Origin: Neoechinorhynchus agilis
Taxonomy: Eukaryota > Animalia > Acanthocephala
Assembly: GCA_051530055.1 (NCBI GenBank)
Contig: CM121341.1
Coordinates: 4,690,784 to 4,754,783, forward strand
DNA length: 64,000 nt
Reading direction: 5' to 3'
The position numbers were made by a program, and so were the translations under genes. The stretch's first letter is position 1, and each line of letters starts with the position of its first letter. Under the pieces are notes generated by a model. The model saw nothing but the letters and a program-made list of their open reading frames with translations, made no database searches and was not told the DNA's origin. Shown piece by piece: positions 11,816 to 46,900 of the stretch.

Positions 11816-11973
11816 TTCCTCGATTTTTAGATCGTATATTAAAGGGCAAAAATGCGTCTTAAAGATTCGAATGAAGTGTATAGAATTAGAGATAAGAAAC
11901 GATAAAAAGCTAAAAAGAGATCTTTAGGGAACATTGTATTTGATTCCGAAGCAGAAATATAAATAAATGAGTT

Positions 11974-27250: not shown

Positions 27251-30200
27251 TTATTGTTCGTGTGCAACTTCATTGTTTACGTCATGTTCTGAATCAATGC
27301 GGCGATTTATTGTCGCAGAAAGATACGAGCGGTGTCACTTTATTGTTTTTCTGTAACTACAACACAATTTTCTTGCTTTGCCGTCAAGTGCATTGAATAT
27401 TCTTATTGTTCGTGTGCAACTTCATTGTTTACGTCATGTTCTGAATCAATGCGGCTATTTATTGTCGCAGAAAGATACGAGCGGTGTCACTTTATTGTTT
27501 TTCTGTAACTACAACACAATTTTCTTGCTTTGCCGTCAAGTGCATTTAATATTCTTATTGTTCGTGTGCAACTTCATTGTTTACGTCATGTTCTGAATCA
27601 ATGCGGCTATTTATTCCCGCAGATAGATACGAGCGGTGTCACTTTATTGTTTTGCGCTAACTAAAACACAATTTTCTTGCTTTGCCGTCAAGTGCATTGA
27701 ATATCCTTATTGTTCGTGTGCAACTTCATTGTTTACGTCATGTTCTGAATCAATGCGGCTATTTATTGTCGCAGATAGATACGAGCGGTGTCACTTTATT
27801 GTTTTTCTGTAACTACAACACAATTTTCTTTCTTTGCCGTCAAGTGCATTGAATATTCTTATTGTTCGTGTGCAACTTCATTGTTTACGTCATGTTCTGA
27901 ATCAATGCGGCGATTTATTGTCGCAGAAAGATACGAGCGGTGTCACTTTATTGTTTTTCTGTAACTACAACACAATTTTCTTGCTTTGCCGTCAAGTGCA
28001 TTTAATATTCTTATTGTTCGTGTGCAACTTCATTGTTTACGTCATGTTCTGAATCAATGCGGCTATTTATTCCCGCAGATAGATACGAGCGGTGTCACTT
28101 TATTGTTTTGCGCTAACTAAAACACAATTTTCTTGCTTTGCCGTCAAGTGCATTGAATATCCTTATTGTTCGTGTGCAACTTCATTGTTTACGTCATGTT
28201 CTGAATCAATGCGGCTATTTATTGTCGCAGATAGATACGGGCGGTGTCACTTTATTGTTTTTCTGTAACTACAACACAATTTTCTTTCATTGCCGTCAAG
28301 TGAATTGAATATTCTTATTGTTCGTGTGCAACTTCATTGTTTACGTCATGTTCTGAATCAATGCGGCTATTTATTCCCGCAGATAGATACGAGCGGTGTC
28401 ACTTTATTGTTTCTCTGTAACTACAACACAATTTTCTTGCTTTGCGGTCAAGTGCATTTAATATTCTTATTGTTTGTGGTCAACTTCATTGTTTACGTCA
28501 TGTTCTGAATCAATGCGGCGATTTATTGTCGCAGATAGATACGGGCGGTGTCACTTTATTGTTTCTCTGTAACTACAACACAATTTTCTTGCTTTGCGGT
28601 CAAGTGCATTTAATATTCTTATTGTTTGTGGTCAACTTCATTGTTTACGTCATGTTCTGAATCAATGCGGCTATTTATTCCCGCAGATAGATACGAGCGG
28701 TGTCACTTTATTGTTTTTCGCTAACTACAACACAATTTTCTTGCTTTGCCGTCAAGTGCATTGAATATCCTTATTGTTCGTGTGCAACTTCATTGTTTAC
28801 GTCATGTTCTGAATCAATGCGGCTATTTATTGTCGCAGAAAGATACGGGCGGTGTCACTTTATTGTTTTTCTGTAACTACAACACAATTTTCTTTCATTG
28901 CCGTCAAGTGAATTGAATATTCTTATTGTTCGTGTGCAACTTCATTGTTTACGTCATGTTCTGAATCAATGCGGCTATTTATTGTCGCAGATAGATACGA
29001 GCGGTGTCACTTTATTGTTTTTCTCTAACTACAACACAATTTTCTTGCTTTGCCGTCAAGTGCATTTAATATTCTTATTGTTCGTGTGCAACTTCATTGT
29101 TTACGTCATGTTCTGAATCAATGCGGCTATTTATTGTCGCAGATAGATACGGGCGGTGTCACTTTATTGTTTTTCTGTAACTACAACACAATTTTCTTGC
29201 TTTGCCGTCAAGTGCATTGAATATTCTTATTGTTCGTGTGCAACTTCATTGTTTGCGTCATGTTCTGAATCAATGCGGCTATTTATTCCCGCAGATAGAT
29301 ACGAGCGGTGTCACTTTATTGTTTCTCTGTAACTACAACACAATTTTCTTGCTTTGCGGTCAAGTGCATTTAATATTCTTATTGTTTGTTGCAACTTCAT
29401 TGTTTACGTCATGTTCTGAATCAATGCGGCTATTTATTCTCGCAGATAGATACGAGCGGTGTCACTTTATTGTTTCTCTGTAACTACAACACAATTTTCT
29501 TGCTTTGCGGTCAAGTGCATTTAATATTCTTATTGTTTGTGGTCAACTTCATTGTTTACGTCATGTTCTGAATCAATGCGGCGATTTATTGTCGCAGATA
29601 GATACGGGCGGTGTCACTTTATTGTTTCTCTGTAACTACAACACAATTTTCTTGCTTTGCCGTCAAGTGCATTTAATATTCTTATTGTTCGTGTTCAACT
29701 TCATTGTTTACGTCATGTTCTGAATCAATGCGGCGATTTATTGTCGCAGATAGATACGAGCGGTGTCACTTTATTGTTTCTCTGTAACTACAACACAATT
29801 TTCTTGCTTTGCGGTCAAGTGCATTTAATATTCTTATTGTTTGTGGTCAACTTCATTGTTTACGTCATGTTCTGAATCAATGCGGCTATTTATTCCCGCA
29901 GATAGATACGAGCGGTGTCACTTTATTGTTTTGCGCTAACTAAAACACAATTTTCTTGCTTTGCCGTCAAGTGCATTGAATATCCTTATTGTTCGTGTGC
30001 AACTTCATTGTTTACGTCATGTTCTGAATCAATGCGGCTATTTATTGTCGCAGAAAGATACGGGCGGTGTCACTTTATTGTTTTTCTGTAACTACAACAC
30101 AATTTTCTTGCTTTGCCGTCAAGTGCATTGAATATCCTTATTGTTCGTGTGCAACTTCATTGTTTACGTCATGTTCTGAATCAATGCGGCTATTTATTGT

Positions 30201-33200
30201 CGCAGAAAGATACGGGCGGTGTCACTTTATTGTTTTTCTGTAACTACAACACAATTTTCTTTCATTGCCGTCAAGTGCATTGAATATCCTTATTGTTCGT
30301 GTGCAACTTCATTGTTTACGTCATGTTCTGAATCAATGCGGCTATTTATTGTCGCAGAAAGATACGGGCGGTGTCACTTTATTGTTTTTCTGTAACTACA
30401 ACACAATTTTCTTTCATTGCCGTCAAGTGCATTGAATATTCTTATTGTTCGTGTGCAACTTCATTGTTTACGTCATGTTCTGAATCAATGCGGCGATTTA
30501 TTGTCGCAGATAGATACGGGCGGTGTCACTTTATTGTTTTTCTGTAACTACAACACAATTTTCTTGCTTTGCCGTCAAGTGCATTGAATATCCTTATTGT
30601 TCGTGTGCAACTTCATTGTTTACGTCATGTTCTGAATCAATGCGGCTATTTATTGTCGCAGAAAGATACGGGCGGTGTCACTTTATTGTTTTTCTGTAAC
30701 TACAACACAATTTTCTTTCATTGCCGTCAAGTGCATTGAATATTCTTATTGTTCGTGTGCAACTTCATTGTTTACGTCATGTTCTGAATCAATGCGGCGA
30801 TTTATTGTCGCAGAAAGATACGAGCGGTGTCACTTTATTGTTTTTCTGTAACTACAACACAATTTTCTTGCTTTGCCGTCAAGTGCATTTAATATTCTTA
30901 TTGTTCGTGTGCAACTTCATTGTTTACGTCATGTTCTGAATCAATGCGGCTATTTATTGTCGCAGAAAGATACGAGCGGTGTCACTTTATTGTTTTTATG
31001 TAACAACAACACAATTTTCTTGCTTTGCCGTCAATTGCATTTAAAATTCTTATTGTTCGTGTGCCACTTCATTGTTTACGTATGTTCTGAATCAATGCGG
31101 CTATTTATTCCCGCAGATAGATACGAGCGGTGTCACTTTATTGTTTTGCGCTAACTAAAACACAATTTTCTTGCTTTGCCGTCAAGTACATTGAATATCC
31201 TTATTGTTCGTGTGCAACTTCATTGTTTACGTCATGTTCTTAATCAATGCGGCTATTTATTCCCGCAGATAGATACGAGCGGTGTCACTTTATTGTTTTG
31301 CGCTAACTAAAACACAATTTTCTTGCTTTGCCGTCAAGTGCATTGAATATCCTTATTGTTCGTGTGCAACTTCATTGTTTACGTCATGTTCTGAATCAAT
31401 GCGGCTATTTATTGTCGCAGAAAGATACGGGCGGTGTCACTTTATTGTTTTTCTGTAACTACAACACAATTTTCTTTCATTGCCGTCAAGTGAATTGAAT
31501 ATTCTTATTGTTCGTGTGCAACTTCATTGTTTGCGTCATGTTCTGAATCAATGCGGCTATTTATTCCCGCAGATAGATACGAGCGGTGTCACTTTATTGT
31601 TTCTCTGTAACTACAACACAATTTTCTTGCTTTGCGGTCAAGTGCATTTAATATTCTTATTGTTTGTGGTCAACTTCATTGTTTACGTCATGTTCTGAAT
31701 CAATGCGGCGATTTATTGTCGCAGATAGATACGGGCGGTGTCACTTTATTGTTTCTCTGTAACTACAACACAATTTTCTTGCTTTGCCGTCAAGTGCATT
31801 GAATATTCTTATTGTTCGTGTGCAACTTCATTGTTTACGTCATGTTCTTAATCAATGCGGCTATTTATTCCCGCAGATAGATACGAGCGGTGTCACTTTA
31901 TTGTTTTTCGCTAACTAAAACACAATTTTCTTGCTTTGCCGTCAAGTGCATTGAATATCCTTATTGTTCGTGCGCAACTTCATTGTTTACGTCATGTTCT
32001 GAATCAATGCGGCTATTTATTGTCGCAGAAAGATACGGGCGGTGTCACTTTATTGTTTTTCTGTAACTACAACACAATTTTCTTTCATTGCCGTCAAGTG
32101 CATTGAATATTCTTATTGTTCGTGTGCAACTTCATTGTTTACGTCATGTTCTGAATCAATGCGGCTATTTATTGCCGCAGATAGATACGAGCGGTGTCAC
32201 TTTATTGTTTTTCGCTAACTACAACACAATTTTCTTGCTTTGCCGTCAAGTGCATTTAATATTCTTATTGTTCGTGTGCAACTTCATTGTTTACGTCATG
32301 TTCTGAATCAATGCGGCGATTTATTGTCGCAGAAAGATACGAGCGGTGTCACTTTATTGTTTCTCTGTAACTACAACACAATTTTCTTTCATTGCCGTCA
32401 AGTGCATTTAATATTCTTATTGTTTGTGGTCAACTTCATTGTTTACGTCATGTTCTGAATCAATGCGGCGATTTATTGTCGCAGAAAGATACGAGCGGTG
32501 TCACTTTATTGTTTTGCTGTAACTACAACACAATTTTTTTCATTGCCGTCAAGTGAATTGAATATTCTTATTGTTCGTGTGCAACTTCATTGTTTACGTC
32601 ATGTTCTGAATCAATGCGGCTATTTATTGTCGCAGATAGATACGAGCGGTGTCACTTTATTGTTTTTCTGTAACTACAACACAATTTTCTTTCATTGCCG
32701 TCAAGTGCATTTAATATTCTTATTGTTCGTGTGCAACTTCATTGTTTACGTCATGTTCTGAATCAATGCGGCGATTTATTGTCGCAGAAAGATACGAGCG
32801 GTGTCACTTTATTGTTTCTCTGTAACTACAACACAATTTTCTTTCATTGCCGTCAAGTGCATTTAATATTCTTATTGTTTGTGGTCAACTTCATTGTTTA
32901 CGTCATGTTCTGAATCAATGCGGCGATTTATTGTCGCAGATAGATACGGGCGGTGTCACTTTATTGTTTTTCTGTAACTACAACACAATTTTCTTTCATT
33001 GCCGTCAAGTGCATTGAATATTCTTATTGTTCGTGTGCAACTTCATTGTTTACGTCATGTTCTGAATCAATGCGGCTATTTATTCCCGCAGATAGATACG
33101 AGCGGTGTCACTTTATTGTTTTTCGCTAACTAAAACACAATTTTCTTGCTTTGCCGTCAAGTGCATTGAATATTCTTATTGTTCGTGTGCAACTTCATTG

Positions 33201-34737
33201 TTTACGTCATGTTCTGAATCAATGCGGCGATTTATTGTCGCAGAAAGATACGGGCGGTGTCACTTTATTGTTTTTCTGTAACTACAACACAATTTTCTTT
33301 CATTGCCGTCAAGTGCATTTAATATTCTTATTGTTCGTGTGCAACTTCATTGTTTACGTCATGTTCTGAATCAATGCGGCTATTTATTCCCGCAGATAGA
33401 TACGAGCGGTGTCACTTTATTGTTTTTCGCTAACTACAACACAATTTTCTTGCTTTGCCGTCAAGTGCATTGAATATTCTTATTGTTCGTGTGCAACTTC
33501 ATTGTTTACGTCATGTTCTGAATCAATGCGGCGATTTATTGTCGCAGAAAGATACGAGCGGTGTCACTTTATTGTTTTTCTGTAACTACAACACAATTTT
33601 CTTTCATTGCCGTAAAGTGCATTGAATATTCTTATTGTTCGTGTGCAACTTCATTGTTTACGTCATGTTCTGAATCAATGCGGCTATTTATTGTCGCAGA
33701 TAGATACGAGCGGTGTCACTTTATTGTTTTTCGCTAACTACAACACAATTTTCTTGCTTTGCCGTCGATTGCATTTAATATTCTTATTGTTCGTGTGCAA
33801 CTTCATTGTTTACGTCATGTTCTGAATCAATGCGGCTATTTATTGTCGCAGAAAGATACGGGCAGTGTCACTTTATTGTTTTTCGCTAACTACAACACAA
33901 TTTTCTTTCATTGCCGTCAAGTGAATTGAATATTTTTATTGTTCGTGTGCAACTTCATTGTTTACGTCATGTTCTGAATCAATGCGGCGATTTATTGTCG
34001 CAGATAGATACGAGCGGTGTCACTTTATTGTTTTTCGCTAACTACAACACAATTTTCTTACTTTGCCGTCAAGTGCATTTAATATTCTTATTGTTCGTGT
34101 GCAACTTCATTGTTTACGTCATGTTCTGAATCAATGCGGCTATTTATTGTCGCAGAAAGATACGGGCGGTGTCACTTTATTGTTTTTCGCTAACTACAAC
34201 ACAATTTTCTATCATTGCCGTCAAGTGCATTTAATATTCTTATTGTTCGTGCGCAACTTCATTGTTTACGTCATGTTCTGAATCAATGCGGCTATTTATT
34301 GTCGCAGATAGATACGAGCGGTGTCACTTTATTGTTTTTCGCTAACTACAACACAATTTTCTATCATTGCCGTCAAGTGCATTGAATATTCTTATTGTTT
34401 GTGGTCTACTTCATTGTTTACGTCATGTTCTGAATCAATGCGGCGATTTATTTTCGCAGATAGATACGAGCGGTGTCACTTTATTGTTTTTCTGTAACTA
34501 CAACACAATTTTCTATCATTGCCGTAAAGTGCATTGAATATTCTTATTGTTCGTGTACAACTTCATTGTTTACGTCATGTTCTGAATCAATGCGGCTATT
34601 TATTGTCGCAGAAAGATACGAGCAGTGTCACTTTATTGTTTTTCTGTAACTAAAACACAATTTTCTTGCTTTGCCGTCAAGTGCATTGAATATTCTTATT
34701 GTTTGTGGTCAACTTCATTGTTTACGTCATGTTCTGA
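27251..34737. repeat. 152-bp satellite, block 1 (about 49 units)
   Basis: Unit TTGCCGTCAAGTGCATTGAATATTCTTATTGTTCGTGTGCAACTTCATTGTTTACGTCATGTTCTGAATCAATGCGGCTATTTATTGTCGCAGATAGATACGAGCGGTGTCACTTTATTGTTTTTCGCTAACTACAACACAATTTTCTTGCT. The period is also visible in ORF-track spacings of 152, 304 and 456 bp. Confidence 0.99.
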
Positions 34738-35109: not shown

Positions 35110-38100
35110 TTAGTCGTCGCTTAATATCTGGTTTAACAAATTATCTTCATCGGAGTCTTCATCGCTGTCAAATTGACTCTCCTCTGGATTTCCGTTTGTA
35201 TTATTAGTCGCGTCATTTTCCTGGTCCTCCTCGGTGTTATCGTTTTTCCTCGGACTGTCAGCGATCCCCAACGCTGCTCGTATCGCGTCCTCTAGTTGAA
35301 GAGTTTCAGCATCCTTTGGTTTTCGTATTACCTCCGCCGGTGGTTCGGATGGTGGTAATTCCTCACGAACGGATTGGGGTGTCATCTCGCCACCTTCAGA
35401 ATAATCTTCTTCTTCGGATTGTTCTCCTTCTGGAGTGCAAGGGCGAAAAAGTATGTTTTCTAGGAACATGTTAACAGTTTGATTAGCATCAACGCTCATA
35501 TAGCTTTCGGCCGGACTGGTAGCCGAAGCGCTTGACGATAGATTAAGTTCCTCTATCGATCGAGGATATTCTAAAATGTACTGCGCGAGCGTTGCCTCGT
35601 CGAACTGAGATGATCCGTTAAATTGATCCTTTGTTTCAACTCCAACTGGAATGGGTATATGTTGCTCAGATTCAAATTGTTCATTGATCTTGTGATATTG
35701 TTGGTGGTGTTCAGTTTGGGGCTCCTGCTGGTTTATCGGTCCAAAGTTAACATCGGGAGAAAAATTGAAGTTATCACGATCGTTGTCTGGCGCTTCAAAT
35801 GAAAAATAGTGCTCGTGTTCGACGTTTGGCCGACGATATCTATCTAAATCTTCATTGGCAATCTCATATCTATCAGCCGACAATGTATTAAATATAGTCC
35901 CCCTTTGCTCATCGTGTAGATTTACGGTGTCATCCAGCTGCAGTTCAGCGGCACTTCGAGTTTCATTCTCTGCTCTAATCTGATTATTTTCTAATCGTTC
36001 TCCGGTCAGATGAGATTTCTGCTCGTTTAGCAACCGGAAATTTTCTTGGTAATCCTCATCATTAAGCCCAACTTTATCCGAAAAATTACGCTGGTTGCTT
36101 TCGTGTGCCCCCTTGATTTCAGCTTCAATATTTGGTTCAGGACACATCTTTTGCTTTTTAGGTGGATGACATTCCGAAACGTCGTGTGTCCTTTTAGTGC
36201 TTTGTTTATCGGAAAAAATTTGGTGGCTCCGTATTGATTTTTGTTCACACATCTGCTCATTCGACTTCGCCGTTTCATCAGTTACCTTATTCGAGGACAG
36301 ATCTGCTCCTTGATAGTTTTGTACGCCCGTCATATTTTCTCTTTGCGTACAATTAATTTTTTGCATTTTGCTTAATTCCTTATAATTATCGGTGCCTTCA
36401 TATTGCCTTTTCATTGCTGTTATTGAATTTTGATTGAATCGTTTTTGGCCACTCGCCGATCGATCATCGCCATCCTTATTGATCATTGAAGCACAGTTCA
36501 TTGAATATCCTTGCTGTTCGCGTGGAACTTCATTCTTAACCTCAGTGTTCTGATTTGGCGCCGCTATTTCGTGTTGTTGATAAAAATGCGCCGTCGTAAT
36601 GTTTTGTGGATCGGTGACTGGAGCATAAGCCGCTTGCTGGCCTTGCAAGTGCATTGAATATCCTTGCTGCTCGCGTTGATCTTCATTGTTAACCTCAGTG
36701 TTCAGATTTTGCGCCGCTATTTCGGTTTGTTGATAGAAACCTACCGTCGCCATGTTTTGTGGTTCGCTGATTGGAGCACAAGCCGCTTGCTGGCCCTGCA
36801 AGTTTATTGAATATCCTTGCTGTTCGCGTGGATCTTCATTGTTTACCCCAGTGTTCGGATTTGGCGCCGTTATTTCGGTTTGTTGATAGAAACCCGCTGC
36901 CGTCATGTTTTGTGGATTGGTTACTGGAGCACGAGCCGCTTGCTGATCCTGCAAGTACATTGAATATCCTTGTTGTTCGCGTTGAACTTCATTGTTTACC
37001 CAAGTGTTCGGATTTGGAGCCGCTATTTCGGTTTCTTGATAGAAACCCACCGTCGCCATGTTTTGTGGTTCGGTGATTGGAGCGCAAGCCGCTTGCTGAT
37101 CCTGCAAGTGCATTGAATATCCTTGCTGTTCGCGTGGATCTTCATTGTTAACCTCAGTGTTCGGATGAGGTGCCGCAATTTCGTATTGTTGGTGGAAACC
37201 CACCGTCGCCATGTTTTGTAGTTCGGTGATTGGAGCACAAGCCGCTTGCTGATCCTGCAAGTGCATTGAATATCCTTGTTGTTCGCGTGGATCTTCATTG
37301 TTAACCTCAGTGTTCGGATTTGGCGCCGTTATTTCGGTTTGTTGATAGAAACCCGCTGCCGTCATGTTTTGTGGATTGGTTACTGGAGCACAAGCCGCTT
37401 GCTGATCCTGCAAGTGCATTGAATATCCTTGCTGTTCGCGTGGAACTTCATTGTTTACCCCAGTGTTCGGATTTGGCGCCGCTATTTCGGTTTGTTGATA
37501 GAAACCCACCGTCGCCATGTTTTGTGGTTCGCTGATTGGAGCACAAGCCGCTTGCTGATCCTGCAAGTGCATTGAATATCCTTGTTGTTCGCGTTGATCT
37601 TCATTGTTAACCTCAGTGTTCTGATTTGGCGCCGCTATTTCGTGTTGTTGATAGAAACCCACCGTCGCCATGTTTTGTGGTTCAGTGATTGGAGCACAAG
37701 CCGCTTGCTCATCCTGCAAGTGCATTGAATATCCTTGTTGTTCGCGTTGATCTTCATTGTTAACCTCAGTGTTCTGATTTGGCGCCGCTATTTCGTGTTG
37801 TTGATAGAAACCCACCGTCGCCATGTTTTGTGGTTCAGTGATTGGAGCACAAGCCGCTTGCTCATCCTGCAAGTGCATTGAATATCCTTGTTGTTCGCGT
37901 TGATCTTCATTGTTAACCTCAGTGTTCTGATTTGGCGCCGCTATTTCGTGTTGTTGATAGAAACCCACCGTCGCCATGTTTTGTGGTTCAGTGATTGGAG
38001 CACAAGCCGCTTGCTCATCCTGCAAGTGCATTGAATATCCTTGTTGTTCGCGTTGATCTTCATTGTTAACCTCAGTGTTCTGATTTGGCGCCGCTATTTC

Positions 38101-41100
38101 GTGTTGTTGATAGAAACCCACCGTCGCCATGTTTTGTGGTTCAGTGATTGGAGCACAAGCCGCTTGCTCATCCTGCAAGTGCATTGAATATCCTTGTTGT
38201 TCGCGTTGATCTTCATTGTTTACCTCAGTGTTCTGATTTGGCGCCGCTATTTCGTGTTGTTGATAGAAACCCACCGTCGCCATGTTTTGTGGTTCAGTGA
38301 TTGGAGCACAAGCCGCTTGCTGATCCTGCAAGTGCATTGAATATCCTTGTTGTTCGCGTTGAACTTCATTGTTTACCCCAGTGTTCGGATTTTGCGCCGC
38401 TATTTCGTTTTGTTGATAGAAGCCCACCGTCGCCATGTTTTTTGGTTCGGTAATTGGAGCACAAGCCGCTTGCTGATCCTGCAAGTGCATTGAATATCCT
38501 TGCTGTTCGCGATGATCTTCATTGTTAACCTCAATGTTCTGATTTGGCGCCGCTGTTTCGTTTTGTTGATAAAAACGTGCTGTTGCCATGTTTTGGTGTT
38601 CGGTGATTCGAGCACATACCGCTTGTTCGGCCGGTAAGTTTATTGAATATCCTCGCTGTTCGCGTGGAACTTCATTGTTTACCTCAGTATTCTGATTGGG
38701 TGCCACTATTTGGCGTTTTTGATAGAAACTCGCCGCCGTCGTGGTTTGTTGATCGGTGAATTGAGCACAAACCGCTTGTTGGGCTTGCAAATGCATCGAA
38801 TATCCTTGCTGTTCGCGTGGAACTTCATTGTTTACCCCAATGTTCTGATTGGGTTCCGCTATTTTGTGTTGTTGATAGAAACCCGCTGCCGTCATGTTTT
38901 GTGGATTGGTTACTGGAGCATAAGCCGCTTGCTGGCCCCGCGAGTTCATTGAATATCCTTCTTGTTCGCTTGGAACTCTATTGTTTACGTCAGTGTTCCG
39001 ATGTGGCCCCGCTATTTGGTGTTGTTGATGGATACCCGCTGTCGCCATGCTTTGTTGATCGGTGGCTGGAGCGCAAGGCATTTGTTTGGTTTGCAAGTGC
39101 ATTGAATATCCTTGTTGTTCGCGTTGAACTCTATTGTTTGCGTCAGCGTTCTGATTAGGTGCCACTACTTGGTTTTGTTGATAGAAACCCGCTGCTGCCA
39201 TGTTTTGTTGATCGGATGCTGGAGTGCAAGGCATTTGTTGGCCCTGCAAGTTCATTGAATATCCTTGTTGTTCGCGTTGAACTCTACTGTTTACGTCCGG
39301 GTTCGAATTGGGTGCCATTACTTGGTATTGTTGATAGAAACCCGCTGCCGCCATGGTTTGTTGATCGGTTAATGGAGCACAAGTCGCTTGCTGGCCCTGC
39401 AAGTTCATTGAATATCCTTGTTGTTCGCGTGGAACTCTATTGTTTACGTCAGCGTTCTGATTAGGTGCCGCTATTTGGTGTTGTTGATGGAAACCCGCTG
39501 CCGCCATGTTTTGTTGATCGTTGAATGGAGCACAAACTCCTTGCTGGCCCTGCAAGTTCATTGAATATCCTTGTTGTTCACGTGAAACTCTATTGTTTAC
39601 GTCAGCGTTCTGATTAGGTGCCGCTATTTGGTGTTGTTGATGGAAACCCGCTGCCGCCATGTTTTGTTGATCGTTGAATGGAGCACAAACTCCTTGCTGG
39701 CCCTGCAAGTTCATTGAATATCCTTGTTGTTCACGTGAAACTCTATTGTTTACGTCAGCGTTCTGATTAGGTGCCGCTATTTGGTGTTGTTGATGGAAAC
39801 CCGCTGCCGCCATGTTTTGTTGATCGTTGAATGGAGCACAAACTCCTTGCTGGCCCTGCAAGTTCATTGAATATCCTTGTTGTTCACGTGAAACTCTATT
39901 GTTTACGTCAGCGTTCTGATTAGGTGCCGCTATTTGGTGTTGTTGATGGAAACCCGCTGCCGCCATGTTTTGTTGATCGTTGAATGGAGCACAAACTCCT
40001 TGCTGGCCCTGCAAGTTCATTGAATATCCTTGTTGTTCACGTGAAACTCTATTGTTTACGTCAGCGTTCTGATTAGGTGCCGCTATTTGGTGTTGAGGAT
40101 AGTAACCCGCGGTTACCATGTTTTGTTGATCGGTGAATGGAGCACAAACTCCTTGCTGGCCCTGCAAGTTCATTGAATATCCTTGTTTTTCGCGTTGAAC
40201 TCTATTGTTTACGTCCGGGTTCTGATTGGGTGCCGCTATTTGGTGTTGTTGATTGAAACCCGCTGCCGCCATGTTTTGTTGATCGGTGAATGGAGCACAA
40301 GCCGCTTGCTGGCCCTGCAAGTGCATTGAATATCCTTGTTTTTCGCGTAGAGCTCTATTGTTTACGTCAGCGCTCTGATTATGTGCCACTACTTGGTGTT
40401 GTTGATGGAAACCCGCTGCCGCCATGCTTTGTTGATCGGTGAATGGAGCACAAGCCGCTTGCTGGCCCTGCAAGTGCATTGAATATCCTTGTTGTTCGCG
40501 TGCAACTCTATTGTTTACGTCAGCGTTCTGATTAGGTGCCACTACTTGGTTTTGTTGGTAGAAACCCGCTGCTGCCATGTTTTGTTGATCGGTGAATGGA
40601 GCACAAACCGCTTGTTGGCCTTGCAAGTGCATTGTAAATCCTTGTTGTTCGCGTGAAACTGTATTGTTTACGTCAGCGTTCTGGTTAGGTGCCGCTATTT
40701 GGTGTTGAGGATTGTAACTCGCGGTTGCCATGTTTTGTTGATCGGTGAATGGAGCACAAGCCGCTTGCTGGCCCTGCAAGGGCATTGAATATCCTTGTTG
40801 TTCGCGTGAAAATCTATTGTTTACGTCGGCGTTCTGATTAGGTGCCACTATTTGGTGTTGAGGATAGTAGCCCGCGGTTGCCATGTTTTGTCGATCGGTA
40901 CCACTAATCATTCGAACAGGATTTGCCATCAATGTAGGATGTATGTTTTGGCCACTATTTCCCAAATTTAATCGTTCTGTTGGCGGTTGTTGTTCTTGCT
41001 GCCATTGTTGCTGATATTGAGCAGGCTGTTGTTGGTTGTTCATCTGAGTTCCGTAGTTATGCACTCCCGATGGGTCTTGGGCATTTTGCAATGTTCCAAT

Positions 41101-41721
41101 ATTTTGGAGAGCTGGGTTATGGTAAATGTTTTGCGGATTGCCGTTTCCTTTAATAAAATTCTGAGCTGTCATCATGGGATTTGGCTGTTGCATTTGCTGC
41201 GTGCCGTAAAAGTGACCCGTATTGCCGGCCAATTGTTGGATATTTTGGTTTTGGAAGGCATTTGCATTGGTTATCGGACCCAAATTTTGTTGGAAATGTC
41301 CAAGCACATTCGGGTTGTAGAAATTTCCTTGAGCATACGGTGCCATCACAGCGGCTCCATTTCCACCCGCTGCAACATCATTTGGTACGGCACCATCGTA
41401 GGTAAGATTTTTAGCTTGAAATTCGTCCCTGTTCCTTAAACGACCATCCTTGTTGCCTCCATTGATGGCCCAGTGCATTCCATTTGGGCCCTGGGATACT
41501 CTTACCAGTGTAAACTTGTTGCTCGCAGATAATTTATGACGAACATAGTTTTGCCAATTTTTTACTCCCTCTTCGTCAGTTATTGCGGCAAAATATGGAT
41601 AATTCTGTTTAAAATAATCGTAGATCTTTTGTAGTGGCAGTGTGCGATTAGGAGCGTTGCTGATCGCCAACCTGGCTATTTCGGAAATGCTTATATCTCC
41701 CCACGCATTTTGTCTCGGCAT
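35110..41721 (-). CDS. FOXO-like: Divergent FoxO-type forkhead protein, copy B, intact 2203 aa, about 29 Q/N-rich repeats, acidic C-terminus
   Basis: Single uninterrupted ORF. N-terminal forkhead domain RQNAWGDISISEIARLAI...WQNYVRHKLS...HW. Confidence 0.92.
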   Translation of the reverse strand: MPRQNAWGDISISEIARLAISNAPNRTLPLQKIYDYFKQNYPYFAAITDEEGVKNWQNYVRHKLSASNKFTLVRVSQGPNGMHWAINGGNKDGRLRNRDEFQAKNLTYDGAVPNDVAAGGNGAAVMAPYAQGNFYNPNVLGHFQQNLGPITNANAFQNQNIQQLAGNTGHFYGTQQMQQPNPMMTAQNFIKGNGNPQNIYHNPALQNIGTLQNAQDPSGVHNYGTQMNNQQQPAQYQQQWQQEQQPPTERLNLGNSGQNIHPTLMANPVRMISGTDRQNMATAGYYPQHQIVAPNQNADVNNRFSREQQGYSMPLQGQQAACAPFTDQQNMATASYNPQHQIAAPNQNADVNNTVSREQQGFTMHLQGQQAVCAPFTDQQNMAAAGFYQQNQVVAPNQNADVNNRVAREQQGYSMHLQGQQAACAPFTDQQSMAAAGFHQQHQVVAHNQSADVNNRALREKQGYSMHLQGQQAACAPFTDQQNMAAAGFNQQHQIAAPNQNPDVNNRVQREKQGYSMNLQGQQGVCAPFTDQQNMVTAGYYPQHQIAAPNQNADVNNRVSREQQGYSMNLQGQQGVCAPFNDQQNMAAAGFHQQHQIAAPNQNADVNNRVSREQQGYSMNLQGQQGVCAPFNDQQNMAAAGFHQQHQIAAPNQNADVNNRVSREQQGYSMNLQGQQGVCAPFNDQQNMAAAGFHQQHQIAAPNQNADVNNRVSREQQGYSMNLQGQQGVCAPFNDQQNMAAAGFHQQHQIAAPNQNADVNNRVPREQQGYSMNLQGQQATCAPLTDQQTMAAAGFYQQYQVMAPNSNPDVNSRVQREQQGYSMNLQGQQMPCTPASDQQNMAAAGFYQQNQVVAPNQNADANNRVQREQQGYSMHLQTKQMPCAPATDQQSMATAGIHQQHQIAGPHRNTDVNNRVPSEQEGYSMNSRGQQAAYAPVTNPQNMTAAGFYQQHKIAEPNQNIGVNNEVPREQQGYSMHLQAQQAVCAQFTDQQTTTAASFYQKRQIVAPNQNTEVNNEVPREQRGYSINLPAEQAVCARITEHQNMATARFYQQNETAAPNQNIEVNNEDHREQQGYSMHLQDQQAACAPITEPKNMATVGFYQQNEIAAQNPNTGVNNEVQREQQGYSMHLQDQQAACAPITEPQNMATVGFYQQHEIAAPNQNTEVNNEDQREQQGYSMHLQDEQAACAPITEPQNMATVGFYQQHEIAAPNQNTEVNNEDQREQQGYSMHLQDEQAACAPITEPQNMATVGFYQQHEIAAPNQNTEVNNEDQREQQGYSMHLQDEQAACAPITEPQNMATVGFYQQHEIAAPNQNTEVNNEDQREQQGYSMHLQDEQAACAPITEPQNMATVGFYQQHEIAAPNQNTEVNNEDQREQQGYSMHLQDQQAACAPISEPQNMATVGFYQQTEIAAPNPNTGVNNEVPREQQGYSMHLQDQQAACAPVTNPQNMTAAGFYQQTEITAPNPNTEVNNEDPREQQGYSMHLQDQQAACAPITELQNMATVGFHQQYEIAAPHPNTEVNNEDPREQQGYSMHLQDQQAACAPITEPQNMATVGFYQETEIAAPNPNTWVNNEVQREQQGYSMYLQDQQAARAPVTNPQNMTAAGFYQQTEITAPNPNTGVNNEDPREQQGYSINLQGQQAACAPISEPQNMATVGFYQQTEIAAQNLNTEVNNEDQREQQGYSMHLQGQQAAYAPVTDPQNITTAHFYQQHEIAAPNQNTEVKNEVPREQQGYSMNCASMINKDGDDRSASGQKRFNQNSITAMKRQYEGTDNYKELSKMQKINCTQRENMTGVQNYQGADLSSNKVTDETAKSNEQMCEQKSIRSHQIFSDKQSTKRTHDVSECHPPKKQKMCPEPNIEAEIKGAHESNQRNFSDKVGLNDEDYQENFRLLNEQKSHLTGERLENNQIRAENETRSAAELQLDDTVNLHDEQRGTIFNTLSADRYEIANEDLDRYRRPNVEHEHYFSFEAPDNDRDNFNFSPDVNFGPINQQEPQTEHHQQYHKINEQFESEQHIPIPVGVETKDQFNGSSQFDEATLAQYILEYPRSIEELNLSSSASATSPAESYMSVDANQTVNMFLENILFRPCTPEGEQSEEEDYSEGGEMTPQSVREELPPSEPPAEVIRKPKDAETLQLEDAIRAALGIADSPRKNDNTEEDQENDATNNTNGNPEESQFDSDEDSDEDNLLNQILSDD
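36490..40880 (-). repeat. Coding tandem repeat (153-bp unit) in copy B
   Basis: Same unit family as in copy A, with runs of near-identical units at about 37550-38250 and 39450-40050. Confidence 0.97.
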
Positions 41722-41930
41722 ATTGTTTTCAAGAATTTGGAGCTTATAATGGTTTGAAAGAGATAAAAGAAGATTTCAACCGTTTGTGAGAGTTTCTAAA
41801 GGATTAAAATACGCTCATCTTTGGTCGTTTTGACTAATGTATTCAGGTGATGTAGCAAACAGTTTTTGGATAAACTATTTACCATTCAAACTCCATATTT
41901 GTCAATAACTCTGCGCTTTCAGCCCCAATA
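41722..41930 (-). promoter_or_regulatory. Conserved upstream block of copy B
   Basis: Homologous to 19572-19790. CAGGTG 41844-41849, GCAAACA 41855-41861, TATTTAC 41876-41882. Confidence 0.5.
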
Positions 41931-42024
41931 GTACACTAAGTTTTGTCGTTGTTTTCAAAACGCCAATAAAATTCAAAACATAAACCGATTTTAGATATTA
42001 CTATCGAGTCGCTGTATTGTATTA

Positions 42025-43957
42025 TTACACTCAATAAGCCATCATCACGTATTTTGGAATTCGGATCATAAGGTCCAGAATATTGGATTGAGGATTGTTG
42101 TGCAGAGTTTTCCTATCTATAGTTTATGTCGTCTTTTATTTAAATTTACAATTATGCATCTTAGTCTCTATACTTAAAGTAAACATACTTTCTCGATTGT
42201 TTCTTTAATTTGCGTTTCAATCACTAAAATTAAGAAGAGTCTAGGTTAGAATTGTTTTTAGAAAGTAGATCACATTCAAAAGATTTGGTATGGTTAATTT
42301 GAGTAATAAGAAAAATATAGATGCATTGGATGGGGACGGATCCGTAAACCAGTTAAACACGAATATTCTAATATAGAATTCGGTATTTGGCGTTCATATT
42401 CGGTGTACTGATCCACAAGGCGACTCGGAAATAAATCGGTGACTTATCGCTAATGAGTTGTAATGATGCCTAAACAACGACAAGAATGGAATTACTTTGC
42501 TAATAGCAAAAACTTTCAAACACACAATAAATTTGATTCCACAAATGTTATTAATAAATCGTTTTATTTCAGGGAACATCAGGTATCTATTGAAACTTGT
42601 AAGTTTTGGGTGTTCCATCTTTGCAGCTACAAAACGTTAGCTGTTGATTGTCGTTTTCCGCTCTCTAGCTTTTGTATTAGTTGAGTTGGCTTTGGTCGGT
42701 TAATTTATAGTTGTTTTCCGCTCTTTCCTCTGAATCATTTCGCATTTGGCCGATTAAGCGCTGGAGACGAAGGTAGAGATTTTTGCGAGGAATTGAAGGA
42801 TGGAAAGTGTTGGGACGATGAGTGTTATAAGTGTAAGTAAAAGGATAAATGTGTGGTAGAAATTGAAGAGGCGGAAGAGAATGAAGGTGTTTTGAGTGCT
42901 TTTGAGATTTGAGAGAGGTGTTCTTCTACGAGTTTGGGGGAGCAGATTAGAGTGAACCTCCATTGTGAAATGTATTAAGTATTTTGGAAAAAGGTTAGAA
43001 GGAAAATTGCAGAAGGTTAGAAGAGCGTAGGTGAGCGTTGGTAGGATCACACGGACATATAAAAGTACTTAAGGTCTTTGGATGATAATCCGAGGAGTCG
43101 GAGGCGTTTAAGAAGATAGAGCTTAATGGATCCCTTGTGCAACAAAATTGATATGTGCTTCTTCTATAGATTTTTCTGAAAATAAAGACCAAGTATACGA
43201 ACAGAGGAGACACGATTGATAGGAAAAGGAAAAAGTGGCTGATCGGAAGGACTATTTGAGATTCAGGGGACGATTTCAAAGCACTTCGTTAAGTTAAGGG
43301 TAAAACATTTAGGGGAGCAAAATTCTTGAACGTGAGAAATCTCGTTAGGAGTAATTGAGAGTGAGACGGAGGATACCGGTACATCCGTAATGATTATAAG
43401 ATCACCCGCATACAAGACGTATTTAGAATAAAAAGAGAATGAAATAAGATCGGTTAGGAAAATGTTGAAAGGAATGGGGAAGAGAACAGTCCGTTCGAGA
43501 ACTCCTTTGTTGATTGCTAAGGTATTCGAGACGATGCTGCCTATTTTGGTAAATTGTAATCGATTGTTTAGAAAGGAATTAAACCATTTGATTTGCCAGG
43601 CGACAAAAATAAATTTAGAGCATGTATCAAGGAGAAGATTTTGATCAACGGAATCAAAAGCTTTATGAATGTCAATTTGGATGAGTCGAGAGATAAATAA
43701 AGGTTTTGCGTCGAGATAATGAAGAACGCGTCGGTACAGAAGCCGGGCCGGTAACCGAATTGAATGGATGAAATTTTTCGATTGAAGATTGGCAGAAGGT
43801 GTGCTTTAAAGCATCTCTCTAAGATTTTAGAGAAGGAATCTAAGTTAGAGATGGGTCGAAAACTTGAGGTGGATATAAGTTCACCTGCTTTCGGGAGCAG
43901 AGTTACCCGATCTCTTTTTGGGCAATTATGGAAGATTCCGGTCTTGAAACTTTGGTT
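42025..43957. repeat. Segmental duplication, copy 2, including a truncated copy of the LINE (about 42670-43957)
   Basis: Matches 20031-21986 and breaks off at ACTTTGGTT, where the satellite resumes. Confidence 0.95.
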
Positions 43958-46900
43958 TCTGAATCAATACGGCTATTCGATGACGCAGATAGATACGAGC
44001 GGTGTCACTTTATTGTTTTTCGCGGACTACAACACAATTTTCTTGCTTTGCCGTCAAGTGCATTTAATATTCTTATTGTTCGTGTGCAACTTCATTGTTT
44101 ACGTCATGTTCTGAATCAATGCGGCTATTTATTGTCGCAGATAGATACGAGCGGTGTCACTTTATTGTTTTTCTGCGACTACAACACAATTTTCTATCAT
44201 TGCCGTCGAGTGCATTTAATATTCTTATTGTTCGTGTGCAACTTCATTGTTTACGTCATGTTCTGAATCAATGCGGCGATTTATTGTCGCAGAAAGATAC
44301 GAGCGGTGTCACTTTATTGTTTTTCTGTAACTACAACACAATTTTCTTGCTTTGCCGTCAAGTGCATTTAATATTCTTATTGTTCGTGTGCAACTTCATT
44401 GTTTACGTCATGTTCTGAATCAATGCGGCGATTTATTGTCGCAGAAAGATACGAGCGGTGTCACTTTATTGTTTTTCGCGGACTACAACACAATTTTCTT
44501 GCTTTGCCGTCAAGTGCATTGAATATTCTTATTGTTCGTGTGCAACTTCATTGTTTACGTCATGTTCTGAATCAATGCGGCTATTTATTGTCGCAGATAG
44601 ATACGAGCGGTGTCACTTTATTGTTTTTCGCTAACTACAACACAATTTTCTTGCTTTGCCGTCAAGTGCATTTAATATTCTTATTGTTCGTGTGCAACTT
44701 CATTGTTTACGTCATGTTCTGAATCAATGCGGCGATTTATTGTCGCAGAAAGATACGAGCGGTGTCACTTTATTGTTTTTCGCTGACTACAACACAATTT
44801 TCTTGCTTTGCCGTCAAGTGCATTTAATATTCTTATTGTTCGTGTGCAACTTCATTGTTTACGTCATGTTCTGAATCAATGCGGCTATTTATTGTCGCAG
44901 ATAGATACGAGCGGTGTCACTTTATTGTTTTTCTCTAACTACAACACAATTTTCTTTCATTGCCGTCGAGTGCATTTAATATTCTTATTGTTCGTGTGCA
45001 ACTTCATTGTTTACGTCATGTTCTGAATCAATGCGGCGATTTATTGTCGCAGAAAGATACGAGCGGTGTCACTTTATTGTTTTTCGCTAACTACAACACA
45101 ATTTTCTTGCTTTGCCGTCAAGTGCATTGAATATTCTTATTGTTCGTGTGCAACTTCATTGTTTACGTCACGTTCTGAATCAATGCGGCGATTTATTGTC
45201 GCAGATAGATACGAGCGGTGTCACTTTATTGTTTTTCGCGGACTACAACACAATTTTCTTGCTTTGCCGTCAAGTGCATTTAATATTCTTATTGTTCGTG
45301 TGCAACTTCATTGTTTACGTCATGTTCTGAATCAATGCGGCTATTTATTGTCGCAGATAGATACGAGCGGTGTCACTTTATTGTTTTTCTGTAACTACAA
45401 CACAATTTTCTATCATTGCCGTCGAGTGCATTTAATATTCTTATTGTTCGTGTGCAACTTCATTGTTTACGTCATGTTCTGAATCAATGCGGCGATTTAT
45501 TGTCGCAGATAGATACGAGCGGTGTCACTTTATTGTTTTTCGCGGTCTACAACACAATTTTCTTGCTTTGCCGTCAAGTGCATTGAATATTCTTATTGTT
45601 CGTGTGCAACTTCATTGTTTACGTCATGTTCTGAATCAATGCGGCGATTTATTGTCGCAGAAAGATACGAGCGGTGTCACTTTATTGTTTTTCGCTGACT
45701 ACAACACAATTTTCTTGCTTTGCCGTCGAGTGCATTTAATATTCTTATTGTTCGTGTGCAACTTCATTGTTTACGTCATGTTCTGAATCAATGCGGCGAT
45801 TTATTGTCGCAGAAAGATACGAGCGGTGTCACTTTATTGTTTCTCTGTAACTACAACACAATTTTCTTGCTTTGCCGTAAGTGCATTGAATATTCTTATT
45901 GTTCGTGTGCAACTTCATTGTTTACGTCATGTTCTGAATCAATGCGGCTATTTATTGTCGCAGAAAGATACGAGCGGTGTCACTTTATTGTTTCTTTGTA
46001 ACTACAACACAATTTTCTTGCTTTGCCGTCAATTGCATTTAAAATTCTTATTGTTCGTGTGCCACTTCATTGTTTACGTCATGTTCTGAATCAATGCGGC
46101 TTGTTATTGTCGCAGAAAGATACGAGCGGTGTCACTTTATTGTTTTCTGTAACTACAACACAATTTTCTATCATTGCCGTAAAGTGCATTGAATATTCTT
46201 ATTGTTCGTGTGCAACTTCATTGTTTACGTCATGTTCTGAATCAATGCGGCGATTTATTGTCGCAGATAGATACGAGCGGTGTCACTTTATTGTTTTTCG
46301 CTAACTACAACACAATTTTCTTGCTTTGCCGTCAAGTGCATTGAATATTCTTATTGTTCGTGTGCAACTTCATTGTTTACGTCATGTTCTGAATCAATGC
46401 GGCGATTTATTGTCGCAGATAGATACGAGCGGTGTCACTTTATTGTTTTTCGCGGACTACAACACAATTTTCTTGCTTTGCCGTAAAGTGCATTTAATAT
46501 TCTTATTGTTCGTGCTCAACTTCATTGTTTACGTCATGTTCTGAATCAATGCGGCTATTTATTGTCGCAGATAGATACGAGCGGTGTCACTTTATTGTTT
46601 TTCGCTAACTACAACACAATTTTCTTGCTTTGCCGTCAAGTGCATTGAATATTCTTATTGTTCGTGTGCAACTTCATTGTTTACGTCATGTTCTGAATCA
46701 ATGCGGCTATTTATTCCCGCAGATAGATACGAGCGGTGTCACTTTATTGTTTTTCGCTAACTACAACACAATTTTCTTGCTTTGCCGTCGAGTGCATTTA
46801 ATATTCTTATTGTTCGTGTGCAACTTCATTGTTTACGTCATGTTCTGAATCAATGCGGCTATTTATTGTCGCAGAAAGATACGAGCGGTGTCACTTTATT

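What the first reader, a model, noticed from the sequence alone, without database searches (positions are those of the whole stretch)
35110..41721. Giant FoxO derivative lacking the Akt control sites and carrying a prion-like repeat domain
The protein starts a few residues before the forkhead domain, so the N-terminal RxRxxT Akt/14-3-3 site of canonical FoxO is absent. The site at the end of the domain (RRRAxS) reads RLRNRDEF in B and RLRKRDEV in A, with no acceptor Ser. About 1500 aa are Q/N-rich repeats with recurring QGYS and GFYQQ aromatic stickers and usually one Cys per unit. Inference: an insulin/Akt-uncoupled, condensate-prone FoxO, an architecture I do not recognise from known FoxO proteins.
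Basis: partly seen in the sequence, partly recalled or inferred. Interest (0 to 1): 0.7.

Follow-up and report, generated by a model that had tools for sequence, protein, structure and literature searches.

The report
Giant FoxO paralogue with satellite-related repeats
In a thorny-headed worm, a fast-evolving copy of the stress and ageing regulator FoxO has lost its insulin/Akt control sites and gained about 1,500 residues of glutamine-rich repeats that share ancestry with the non-coding satellite DNA beside the gene, but nothing yet shows that it is expressed or what it does.

Summary
Window 35110-41721 (-) is one 2203-aa ORF. It is already annotated as hypothetical protein ACOME3_000983 of Neoechinorhynchus agilis (Acanthocephala). 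It encodes an N-terminal FoxO-class forkhead domain, a Q/N-rich linker, 29 exact 51-aa repeats and an acidic tail. It has no RxRxxS/T motif anywhere.

- All six FoxO-class genes found in this species lack Akt motifs, including the orthodox orthologue, so the uncoupling is lineage-wide.
- "Prion-like" is untested. The repeats are 29% Q+N, 11-15% charged, and modelled as disordered.

- The 153-bp coding repeat is homologous (about 70% overall, 82-85% in a 60-bp core) to the 152-bp non-coding satellite arrays on both sides.
- Almost every satellite unit carries GTAAACAA, the canonical FoxO site.
- Copy A has three frame-breaking lesions.
- A and B lack the forkhead-domain intron kept by three other N. 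agilis FoxO genes.
- The locus lies just downstream of a 28S rRNA gene.

Within B's array, amino-acid changes look neutral (omega about 1), but stop codons are depleted (P about 1e-4). The forkhead dN/dS between A and B is 0.37.

Best reading: a real, lineage-specific FoxO derivative with a disordered repeat region. Expression is unknown.

The parts
35110..41721 (-). Gene B main ORF (2203 aa), equal to GenBank ACOME3_000983 from its Met10 onward
41722..41818 (-). Annotated 5' extension. Exon 1 is ATG AGC (41813-41818), the GT..AG intron is 70 nt (41743-41812), and 21 nt (41722-41742) encode LQILENN. It contains no Akt motif.
   Evidence: BRAKER2 model described in PMC12690905
41422..41715 (-). 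FoxO-class forkhead domain (aa 3-100). It spans NAWG, H1-H3 with N/R/H/S of the recognition helix retained, wing 1, and a wing 2 reading GRLRNRDEF
40954..41421 (-). Non-repetitive Q/N-rich linker (aa 101-256): 35% Q+N, 5% charged
36499..40953 (-). Coding tandem array: 153 bp = 51 aa, 28 full units plus partial units at both ends, two sub-families (neutral N-terminal half, acidic C-terminal half)
35110..36498 (-). Acidic C-terminal tail (462 aa, net charge -50) ending in DSDEDSDEDNLLNQILSDD, plus the stop codon. Only about the last 40 aa are shared with copy A.
11974..19571 (-). Paralogue A: same architecture, but four ORFs separated by three frame-breaking lesions, in the units at 18654 (rearranged, 133 bp), 17456 (-1 bp) and 14436 (-6 and -1 bp)
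27233..34737 (-). Satellite array sat1: 152-bp unit, about 49 copies, same orientation as the genes, stops in all frames, homologous to the coding repeat
43957..60569 (-). Satellite array sat2: 152-bp unit, about 109 copies, consensus 97% identical to sat1
26974..27240 (-). In-register switch from a satellite-type to a coding-type half unit (94-97% identical to A units), followed by C-tail remnants (about 82% to A 12067-12208 and B 35937-36023). This is the remnant of a third gene copy recombined with the satellite.
42022..43957 (-). Degenerate non-LTR reverse-transcriptase fragment upstream of B, 98.5% identical to 20028-21986 upstream of A
41722..41930 (-). Proximal upstream region shared with copy A. 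The 40900-41930 block is 91.8% identical to 18750-19780.

Best explanation
Gene B is a real, lineage-specific and fast-evolving FoxO-class paralogue of Neoechinorhynchus agilis.

Shown:
- It encodes a FoxO-type winged-helix domain at the extreme N-terminus that keeps the four recognition-helix residues canonical FoxOs use to read GTAAACA (N, R, H, S).
- About half of the otherwise conserved FoxO positions are changed.
- It has none of the Akt/14-3-3 motifs, like every other FoxO-class gene found in this species.
- It lacks the forkhead-domain intron that three other N. agilis FoxO genes keep.
- About 1,640 residues of Q/N/A-rich sequence follow. Of these, 1,485 are a 51-aa tandem repeat that shares ancestry with the flanking 152-bp satellite.
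- Within the array, amino-acid changes accumulate as fast as silent ones, but the frame is kept free of stops and indels.

Inferred:
- The protein is a DNA-binding nuclear factor whose localisation is not gated by insulin/PI3K/Akt.
- The disordered repeat region plus the acidic, CK2-site-like C-terminal tail act as a length- and composition-dependent, multivalent activation or scaffolding region, not as a folded domain.
- The A/B ancestor arose by retroposition or precise intron loss from a short FoxO-like gene. The ACOME3_002314/002317 lineage is the nearest relative.
- Which came first, the coding repeat or the satellite, is unresolved. I lean slightly towards coding repeat first, then satellite.
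For: Identity and class:
- Searches place the domain in the FoxO class. A FoxO-specific HMM gives 95/79 bits against 67/50 for generic Pfam.
- One search shows N, R, H and S of helix 3 are kept.

Akt motifs: absent in A, B and the four other N. agilis FoxO-class proteins.

Selection:
- Forkhead dN/dS between A and B is 0.365 (Fisher P = 0.007); over residues 1-305 P = 0.003.
- There are no stops in 28 units where 7.3 stop-creating variants are expected at the observed substitution rates (P about 0.002 x 0.048).
- All 28 spacings are exactly 153 bp, whereas about 10% of satellite units have length changes.
- GC by codon position is 0.63/0.37/0.41.

Disorder: AlphaFold pLDDT 33.9 and pTM 0.10 on three units with a 35-row alignment.

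Intron: ACOME3_008746, 002314 and 002317 have a 48-50-nt intron exactly between W-K and (N/T)-S-[IV]-R-H. A and B read straight through.

Annotation: BRAKER2 called the gene (PMC12690905).

Relatives: NJ groups A+B with 002314/002317 at 67% bootstrap.
Against: - Omega is about 1 among repeat units (transitions 1.04, transversions 0.97) and the three codon positions vary equally.
- Only 26 of 58 strongly conserved FoxO positions survive in B, and B's recognition helix is more derived than that of the broken copy A.
- Paralogue A has three frame-breaking lesions.
- No relative of the repeat or tail was found among 5.8 billion proteins.
- No expression evidence was accessible.
- The locus sits among satellite, retroelement fragments and rDNA.
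- The assembly is a hybrid of ONT R9.4 reads from a pool of 50 worms plus Illumina, so unit counts are uncertain (PMC12690905).
- Placement inside the FoxO clade has only 33% bootstrap support.
Confidence: 0.6

Rival explanations
1. Gene B is a young or decaying duplicate with no function. Its long ORF persists only because the array expanded recently from stop-free units, and it is heading the same way as copy A.
For: - Omega is about 1 in the repeats.
- A is already broken three times.
- Several consecutive units are identical (units 6-8 and 18-21), which indicates very recent amplification.
- The forkhead domain is heavily eroded.
- The surroundings are heterochromatin-like: satellite, retroelement fragments and rDNA.
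- The repeat and tail have no relatives elsewhere.
Against: - The stop-codon depletion was computed on distinct variants, so amplification alone does not explain it (P about 1e-4).
- Forkhead dN/dS is 0.37, significantly below 1.
- The base-contacting residues are kept.
- The acidic C-terminal motif is conserved between A and B although the rest of the tail has diverged beyond alignment.
Confidence: 0.22
2. The protein is a satellite-binding factor. Its FoxO-type domain recognises the GTAAACAA element present once per 152-bp satellite unit, so gene and satellite form a co-evolving module at the rDNA flank. This would work like CENP-B with alpha-satellite or Prod and D1 with fly satellites.
For: - GTAAACAA lies on the gene strand in 146 of 150 satellite units, in 22 of 30 A units and 17 of 28 B units. 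It occurs only twice elsewhere in the window, both on the + strand.
- The motif lies in the 60-bp core best conserved between satellite and coding repeat.
- The helix-3 contact residues are kept.
- TTGTTTAC/GTAAACAA is the established DAF-16/FoxO binding element (my knowledge: Furuyama et al. 2000).
Against: - The motif is no better conserved than much of the very homogeneous satellite; it ranks 16th of 145 8-mer windows.
- In the coding repeat it simply spells Val-Asn-Asn, so the satellite may have inherited it passively.
- The prior chance of one such 8-mer in a 152-bp unit is about 1% (my estimate from base composition), and I noticed the motif only after the fact.
- No binding data exist.
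Confidence: 0.1
3. The coding repeat is an annotation or assembly artefact: ordinary satellite DNA read through by an ORF finder or gene predictor, or a mis-assembled array.
For: - The coding repeat is homologous to the satellite.
- Tandem repeats are hard to assemble from ONT R9.4 reads of pooled worms.
- Runs of identical units are present.
Against: - The coding and satellite units form two discrete families about 30% apart with no intermediates.
- The coding period is 153 bp against 152 bp for the satellite, and GC is 48% against 37%.
- The array is in frame with the forkhead domain and the conserved C-terminus over 6.6 kb.
- The satellite consensus has four stops in the corresponding frame.
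Confidence: 0.05

Closest known systems
Canonical FoxO / DAF-16 transcription factors
   Same: - The forkhead domain is of the FoxO class, with the NAWG motif and the five-residue insertion before helix 3.
- The N, R, H and S contact residues are kept.
- The best matches in the PDB, and nearly all of the best single-domain matches in the 1.8-billion-protein library, are FoxOs.
   Different: - Forkhead identity to canonical FoxOs is only 33-36%, and half of the conserved positions are changed.
- There is no N-terminal arm and none of the three Akt/SGK sites.
- Neither FOXO-TAD nor the KIX-binding region is detected.
- The conserved forkhead-domain intron is missing.
- The protein is four to five times longer and contains 29 x 51-aa repeats.
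N. agilis short FoxO-like proteins ACOME3_002314 / ACOME3_002317 (253 and 280 aa)
   Same: - Same species and chromosome.
- FoxO-type spacing, no Akt motifs, and a similarly eroded domain, including VRHKLS in helix 3 and H-W in wing 1.
- Sister group to A+B in the NJ tree at 67% bootstrap.
   Different: - Only 34-40% identical to A/B in the forkhead domain.
- They keep the forkhead intron.
- They have no repeats, no Q/N-rich region and no similarity outside the domain.
Transcription factors with glutamine-rich or polyQ low-complexity regions (for example FOXP2, Sp1-type Q-rich activation domains)
   Same: A sequence-specific DNA-binding domain joined to a Q-rich region that is predicted to be disordered.
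   Different: Here the region is a long, exactly periodic 51-aa tandem array of about 1,500 residues with regular Cys, aromatic and acidic positions. It has a non-coding satellite counterpart next door.
Genes embedded in or built from macro- or minisatellites (DUX4 in D4Z4, the PRDM9 zinc-finger minisatellite, Stellate/Su(Ste) in Drosophila)
   Same: A protein-coding sequence and a tandem DNA array share units and evolve by unequal exchange. An in-register recombinant junction between satellite and coding units is present at 27240.
   Different: In those cases each repeat unit carries the gene, or a folded domain, or the array consists of whole-gene copies. Here a 153-bp intragenic disordered repeat has a diverged 152-bp frame-breaking satellite twin.
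rDNA intergenic-spacer sub-repeats
   Same: The 152-bp array starts 1.7 kb downstream of the 3' end of a 28S gene and has the same orientation.
   Different: The window contains no 18S gene or next rDNA unit over the following 60 kb, and protein-coding genes are interspersed. Whether other rDNA units carry the repeat could not be checked.

Membership tests
Forkhead (winged-helix) transcription factors | Forkhead domain detectable by profile (Pfam PF00250) | tested here: met
   B scores E 3.5e-13 (49.9 bits) and A scores E 1.8e-18 (66.9 bits); the cut-off is 27 bits.
FoxO subfamily | Closest similarity is to FoxO, not to other Fox classes | tested here: met
   - The top 11 PDB matches are FOXO1/3/4 and 2mbf, at 44-62 bits; the best other class scores 45.8 bits for A and 37.8 bits for B.
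- Nearly all of the best single-domain library hits are canonical FoxOs.
- A FoxO-specific HMM adds 28-29 bits over the generic profile.
FoxO subfamily | FoxO signature: NAWG at the domain start and a five-residue insertion before helix 3 (51 residues from NAWG to WKNSIRH) | tested here: met
   The spacing is 51 residues in A and B, as in 121 canonical FoxOs. The inserted residues themselves are not conserved.
FoxO subfamily | Phylogenetic placement inside the FoxO clade | tested here: inconclusive
   In an NJ tree of 112 columns with 17 non-FoxO domains as outgroup, A/B fall on the FoxO side, but with only 33% bootstrap support and on a long branch.
FoxO subfamily | Three Akt/SGK sites (RxRxxS/T: N-terminal, end of wing 2, about 60 residues downstream) with 14-3-3 binding | tested here: not met
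   No RxRxxS/T anywhere in A or B. The other four N. agilis FoxO-class proteins also lack it.
FoxO subfamily | Conserved intron inside the forkhead domain (between GWK and NSIRH) | tested here: not met
   The intron is present at that position in ACOME3_008746, 002314 and 002317 (48-50 nt) and absent in A and B. Its conservation across Metazoa is from my knowledge and was not tested here.
FoxO subfamily | C-terminal transactivation (PF16676) and KIX-binding (PF16675) regions | tested here: not met
   No match even at E <= 10 on the tails of A and B. The orthodox N. agilis FoxO also has only PF00250 on record.
FoxO subfamily | Binding to GTAAACA(A) through N, R, H and S of helix 3 | not testable with these tools
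   All four residues are conserved in A and B. Binding itself needs an experiment.
Prion-like / Q/N-rich low-complexity domains | Long stretch rich in Q/N, poor in charged and aliphatic residues, disordered, positive in a PLAAC-type HMM | tested here: inconclusive
   - Linker: 35% Q+N, 5% charged.
- Repeats: 29% Q+N, but 11-15% charged and about 17% aliphatic or Met.
- AlphaFold pLDDT is 34.
- PLAAC was not available.
Satellite DNA | Long head-to-tail, homogeneous, non-coding arrays | tested here: met
   Two 152-bp arrays of about 49 and about 109 units show 93-94% matches and have stops in all frames. Genome-wide abundance was not testable.

The most novel reading that the evidence does not exclude
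Gene and satellite are one evolving module. A FoxO-derived retrocopy landed beside the rDNA, and its 1,500-residue repeat domain and the flanking 152-bp satellite are two states of the same tandem unit. Either a satellite was exonised into a protein domain, or a coding repeat escaped and became a satellite. The encoded forkhead protein, or its five FoxO-class paralogues, binds the GTAAACAA site that almost every satellite unit carries, which would make it a lineage-specific satellite or rDNA-flank chromatin protein.
Probability: 0.12. Interest if true: 0.8.

Novelty: new variant of a known kind. Interest (0 to 1): 0.55.

Why it matters
FoxO is normally a single, highly conserved, Akt-gated gene in invertebrates. 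In this 46-Mb parasite genome, which has lost many signalling genes (PMC12690905), at least six FoxO-class genes were found. None has an Akt motif, and they range from orthodox to extremely derived. That offers a natural experiment on what FoxO does once it is freed from insulin control.

Separately, the locus shows clearly that a long disordered protein repeat and a non-coding satellite share ancestry and still recombine with each other. This bears on how low-complexity protein domains and satellites arise. If the protein binds the FoxO sites in its own satellite, it would be a new example of a transcription factor recruited to satellite chromatin.

Tried and rejected
- **Word-index search, forkhead domain alone.** It found nothing, not even the gene's own record, so the index is insensitive for short queries.
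- **Exact-sequence lookup of my ORF.** It failed because the annotated product is 9 residues longer.
- **AlphaFold on the forkhead domain.** With a 2-row alignment the pLDDT was 38.6. The order of secondary-structure elements fits a winged helix, but the model was too poor to use, so I ran no fold search.
- **Pfam on both tails at E <= 10.** No FoxO TAD or KIX region, only noise.
- **A third forkhead copy.** A tblastn search upstream of the satellite arrays found none.
- **Polarising satellite versus coding repeat.**
  - There is no gradient of similarity along either coding array and there are no intermediate units.
  - Differences are spread evenly over codon positions (13/14/15).
  - The 5' edge of sat1 is ambiguous.
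  - I first read the coding-type half unit at the 3' edge of sat1 as an ancestral edge unit. I rejected that reading because the switch lies inside the shared 60-bp core and is better explained by ectopic recombination with a third gene copy.
- **Special conservation of GTAAACAA within the satellite.** It is not above background.
- **Rescuing copy A's first lesion as an intron.** GT..AG removals that keep the frame open exist, but each deletes part of a repeat unit or inserts junk. Copy B has nothing comparable.
- **Satellite copies near the other FoxO-like genes.** None in L002 or L003.
- **Literature.** The N. agilis genome paper and the rotiferan gene-loss paper do not mention forkhead, FoxO, insulin or Akt. 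No paper in the held library treats FoxO in Acanthocephala.

Full report
**Source and observation**

The window comes from Neoechinorhynchus agilis (Acanthocephala), assembly GCA_051530055.1, chromosome-scale scaffold CM121341.1. A search of 5.8 billion proteins with the whole ORF returned a single hit, 100% identical: hypothetical protein ACOME3_000983, 2212 aa. Its gene maps onto the window.

- The ORF at 35110..41721 (-) is open for 2203 codons.
- The GenBank model adds nine residues through a two-codon first exon (ATG AGC at 41813-41818) and a 70-nt GT..AG intron.
- In the ORF's own frame a stop lies 19 codons upstream of the ATG.
- No upstream Akt site is therefore present in the sequence or in the annotation.
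- The published genome is 46.2 Mb. It was assembled with MaSuRCA from ONT R9.4 reads of a pool of about 50 worms plus Illumina, and annotated with BRAKER2 trained on RNA-seq (PMC12690905). The paper does not mention forkhead, FoxO, insulin or Akt.

**Class of the DNA-binding domain**

- Pfam Forkhead matches aa 10-90 of B (E 3.5e-13) and of the paralogue A (E 1.8e-18).
- Against all PDB sequences, the eleven best matches for both copies are FOXO1, FOXO3, FOXO4 or the entry 2mbf, at 44-62 bits. The next class scores 45.8 bits for A (FOXN3) and 37.8 bits for B (ILF/FOXK). The alignments are gapless from R-x-NAWG to wing 2.
- An exhaustive HMMER scan of 1.84 billion representatives found nothing above 44% identity. 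Nearly all of the best single-domain hits are canonical FoxOs that carry NAWG, WKNSIRH 51 residues later, and the three RxRxxS/T sites. A and B have the same 51-residue spacing.
- A profile built from 121 canonical FoxO domains scores A at 95 bits and B at 79 bits, 28-29 bits above the generic profile.
- Of 58 positions that are at least 80% conserved in canonical FoxOs, A keeps 29 and B keeps 26. The helix-3 residues N, R, H and S, which read the DNA in FoxO structures (my knowledge of the FOXO1/3 complexes), are all kept.
- A distance tree puts A+B (100%) with two short N. agilis FoxO-like proteins (67%). It places this group on the FoxO side of 17 non-FoxO domains, but with only 33% support.
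- I therefore call the domain FoxO-derived on signature and similarity. The phylogeny is inconclusive.

**Akt control**

Neither RxRxxS/T nor the relaxed [RK]x[RK]xx[ST] occurs anywhere in A or B. Wing 2 reads GRLRNRDEF in B and GRLRKRDEV in A.

This is not peculiar to the giant gene. Cluster look-ups showed four more N. agilis FoxO-class proteins:
- ACOME3_008746, with an orthodox domain: median 66% identity to canonical FoxOs, and E about 1e-42 to hundreds of named FoxOs.
- ACOME3_000431, at 50% median identity.
- ACOME3_002314 and ACOME3_002317, at 38%.

None of them has an RxRxxS/T motif. A canonical forkhead domain exists elsewhere in the genome, but I found no Akt-gated FoxO. I could not test whether the kinase pathway itself survives in this reduced genome.

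**Gene structure**

The three other N. agilis FoxO genes I could inspect each have a 48-50-nt intron exactly between W-K and (N/T)-S-[IV]-R-H. That is the position of the classical FoxO forkhead intron (my knowledge). A and B read straight through this point. This suggests retroposition or a precise intron loss at the origin of the A/B lineage.

**The repeat region and its link to the satellite**

- B contains 28 full units, all exactly 51 aa (153 bp), plus partial units at each end. The consensus is QQGYSMHLQGQQAACAPFTDQQNMATAGFYQQHEIAAPNQNTEVNNEVPRE. There are two sub-families: a neutral N-terminal half and an acidic C-terminal half with net charge -71.
- Three units modelled with a 35-row alignment of unit windows gave pLDDT 33.9 and pTM 0.10, consistent with disorder.
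- Tandem Repeats Finder also reported two large non-coding arrays with a 152-bp period: 27233-34737 and 43957-60569.
- These arrays have the same orientation as the genes and are homologous to the coding unit. The consensus sequences align with a single 1-bp gap at 68-72% identity, rising to 82-85% over a 60-bp core.
- In the coding frame the satellite consensus reads as a ghost of the protein with four stops, several of them CAA to TAA.
- The two families are discrete. There are no intermediate units and no gradient along the arrays.
- At 27240 a satellite unit switches, in register and inside the shared core, to a coding-type half unit that is 94-97% identical to A's units. Diverged fragments of the C-terminal tail follow. 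I read this as ectopic recombination between the satellite and the repeat array of a third gene copy.
- That junction proves physical exchange between the two arrays, but it does not show which came first.
- For a coding origin: only neutral decay is needed (stops, -1 bp, and a 23:7 excess of coding-GC/satellite-AT differences). The non-repetitive linker and A's tail are also Q/N-rich.
- For a satellite origin: the retrocopy-like gene structure, and the satellite's position 1.7 kb downstream of a 28S rRNA gene, where spacer sub-repeats usually lie.

**Is B under selection?**

- Between A and B the forkhead domain has dN/dS 0.365 (14 synonymous against 22 non-synonymous differences; Fisher P = 0.007). 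Residues 1-305 together give P = 0.003.
- Within B's array the three codon positions vary equally (0.106/0.108/0.108). Distinct variants are as frequent at non-synonymous sites as at synonymous sites, with ratios of 1.04 for transitions and 0.97 for transversions.
- None of the 23 possible stop-creating changes has produced a stop, although 7.3 would be expected at those rates (P about 0.002 x 0.048).
- All 28 spacings are exactly 153 bp, while about 10% of satellite spacings deviate from 152 bp.
- The array thus behaves as a region where openness, length and composition matter, but individual residues do not.
- Copy A, in contrast, has three frame-breaking lesions: a rearranged 133-bp unit, a -1 bp deletion, and a -6/-1 bp deletion. 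None lies in a homopolymer run. A is probably a pseudogene, although an assembly error cannot be excluded.

**A FoxO site in every unit**

The shared core contains GTAAACAA, the canonical DAF-16/FoxO element (my knowledge). In the coding repeat it spells Val-Asn-Asn.
- It is present on the gene strand in 146 of 150 satellite units, 22 of 30 A units and 17 of 28 B units. It occurs only twice elsewhere in the window.
- It is not better conserved than much of this very homogeneous satellite, ranking 16th of 145 8-mer windows.
- I treat satellite binding as a low-probability lead, though an interesting one.

**Verdict**

The gene is a FoxO derivative without Akt sites and with a disordered Q/N-rich repeat. 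However, the Akt loss is lineage-wide, prion-likeness is untested, and expression is unknown.

The most distinctive feature is the shared ancestry of the protein repeat and the flanking satellite. I rate this as a new variant of a known kind.

Noticed in passing
window 62282-64000 (-): This is the 3' part of a eukaryotic 28S rRNA gene (Rfam RF02543, 844 bits), and it runs off the window end. The FoxO-like genes and the satellite therefore lie immediately downstream of an rDNA unit. No 18S gene follows within 60 kb.
   Followed up: partly
window 27233-34737 and 43957-60569: Almost every 152-bp satellite unit (146 of 150) carries GTAAACAA, the canonical FoxO/DAF-16 binding element, always on the same strand as the genes.
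   Followed up: partly
L002 3001-4368; L003 594-1405 and 10001-10893: N. agilis has at least four further FoxO-class genes: ACOME3_008746, 000431, 002314 and 002317. None has an RxRxxS/T motif. The three I inspected keep a 48-50-nt intron at the classical FoxO position inside the forkhead domain.
   Followed up: partly
window 20028-22118 and 42022-43957 (-); also 60570-61100 (-): These are degenerate non-LTR reverse-transcriptase fragments (a weak RVT_1 match). The two copies upstream of A and B are 98.5% identical, which is more than the genes themselves (about 92%). Another RT-like piece lies between the 28S gene and the satellite, so an rDNA-associated element is possible.
   Followed up: partly
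window 49-2846 (+): A Ty3/gypsy-type LTR-retrotransposon pol region (protease, RT, RNase H, integrase) is split into two ORFs.
   Followed up: no
window 23954-24502 (+) and 25124-25975 (-): A 182-aa GNAT acetyltransferase ORF and an annotated 283-aa gene with no Pfam match lie between copy A's upstream region and the satellite. B's otherwise parallel upstream region has no counterpart to this segment.
   Followed up: no
window 3800-4625 and 2999-3264: Two further tandem repeats are present: a 326-bp unit in 2.5 copies and a 141-bp unit in 1.9 copies. Neither is related to the 152/153-bp family.
   Followed up: no
window 43957-60569: Tandem Repeats Finder scores periods of 304 and 456 bp as well as 152 bp over sat2, which hints at a higher-order repeat structure.
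   Followed up: no
window 11819-11914 vs 34906-35001: About 96 bp just downstream of the stop codons of A and B are 88.5% identical, although most of the coding tails no longer align. This could be a conserved 3'UTR element or a gene-conversion tract. An AATAAA overlaps B's stop codon.
   Followed up: no
proteins P0167 and P0171 (ENA contigs, organism unknown): These unnamed proteins carry two to four tandem FoxO-like forkhead domains and no Akt motifs. They were the closest hits to the orthodox N. agilis FoxO.
   Followed up: no
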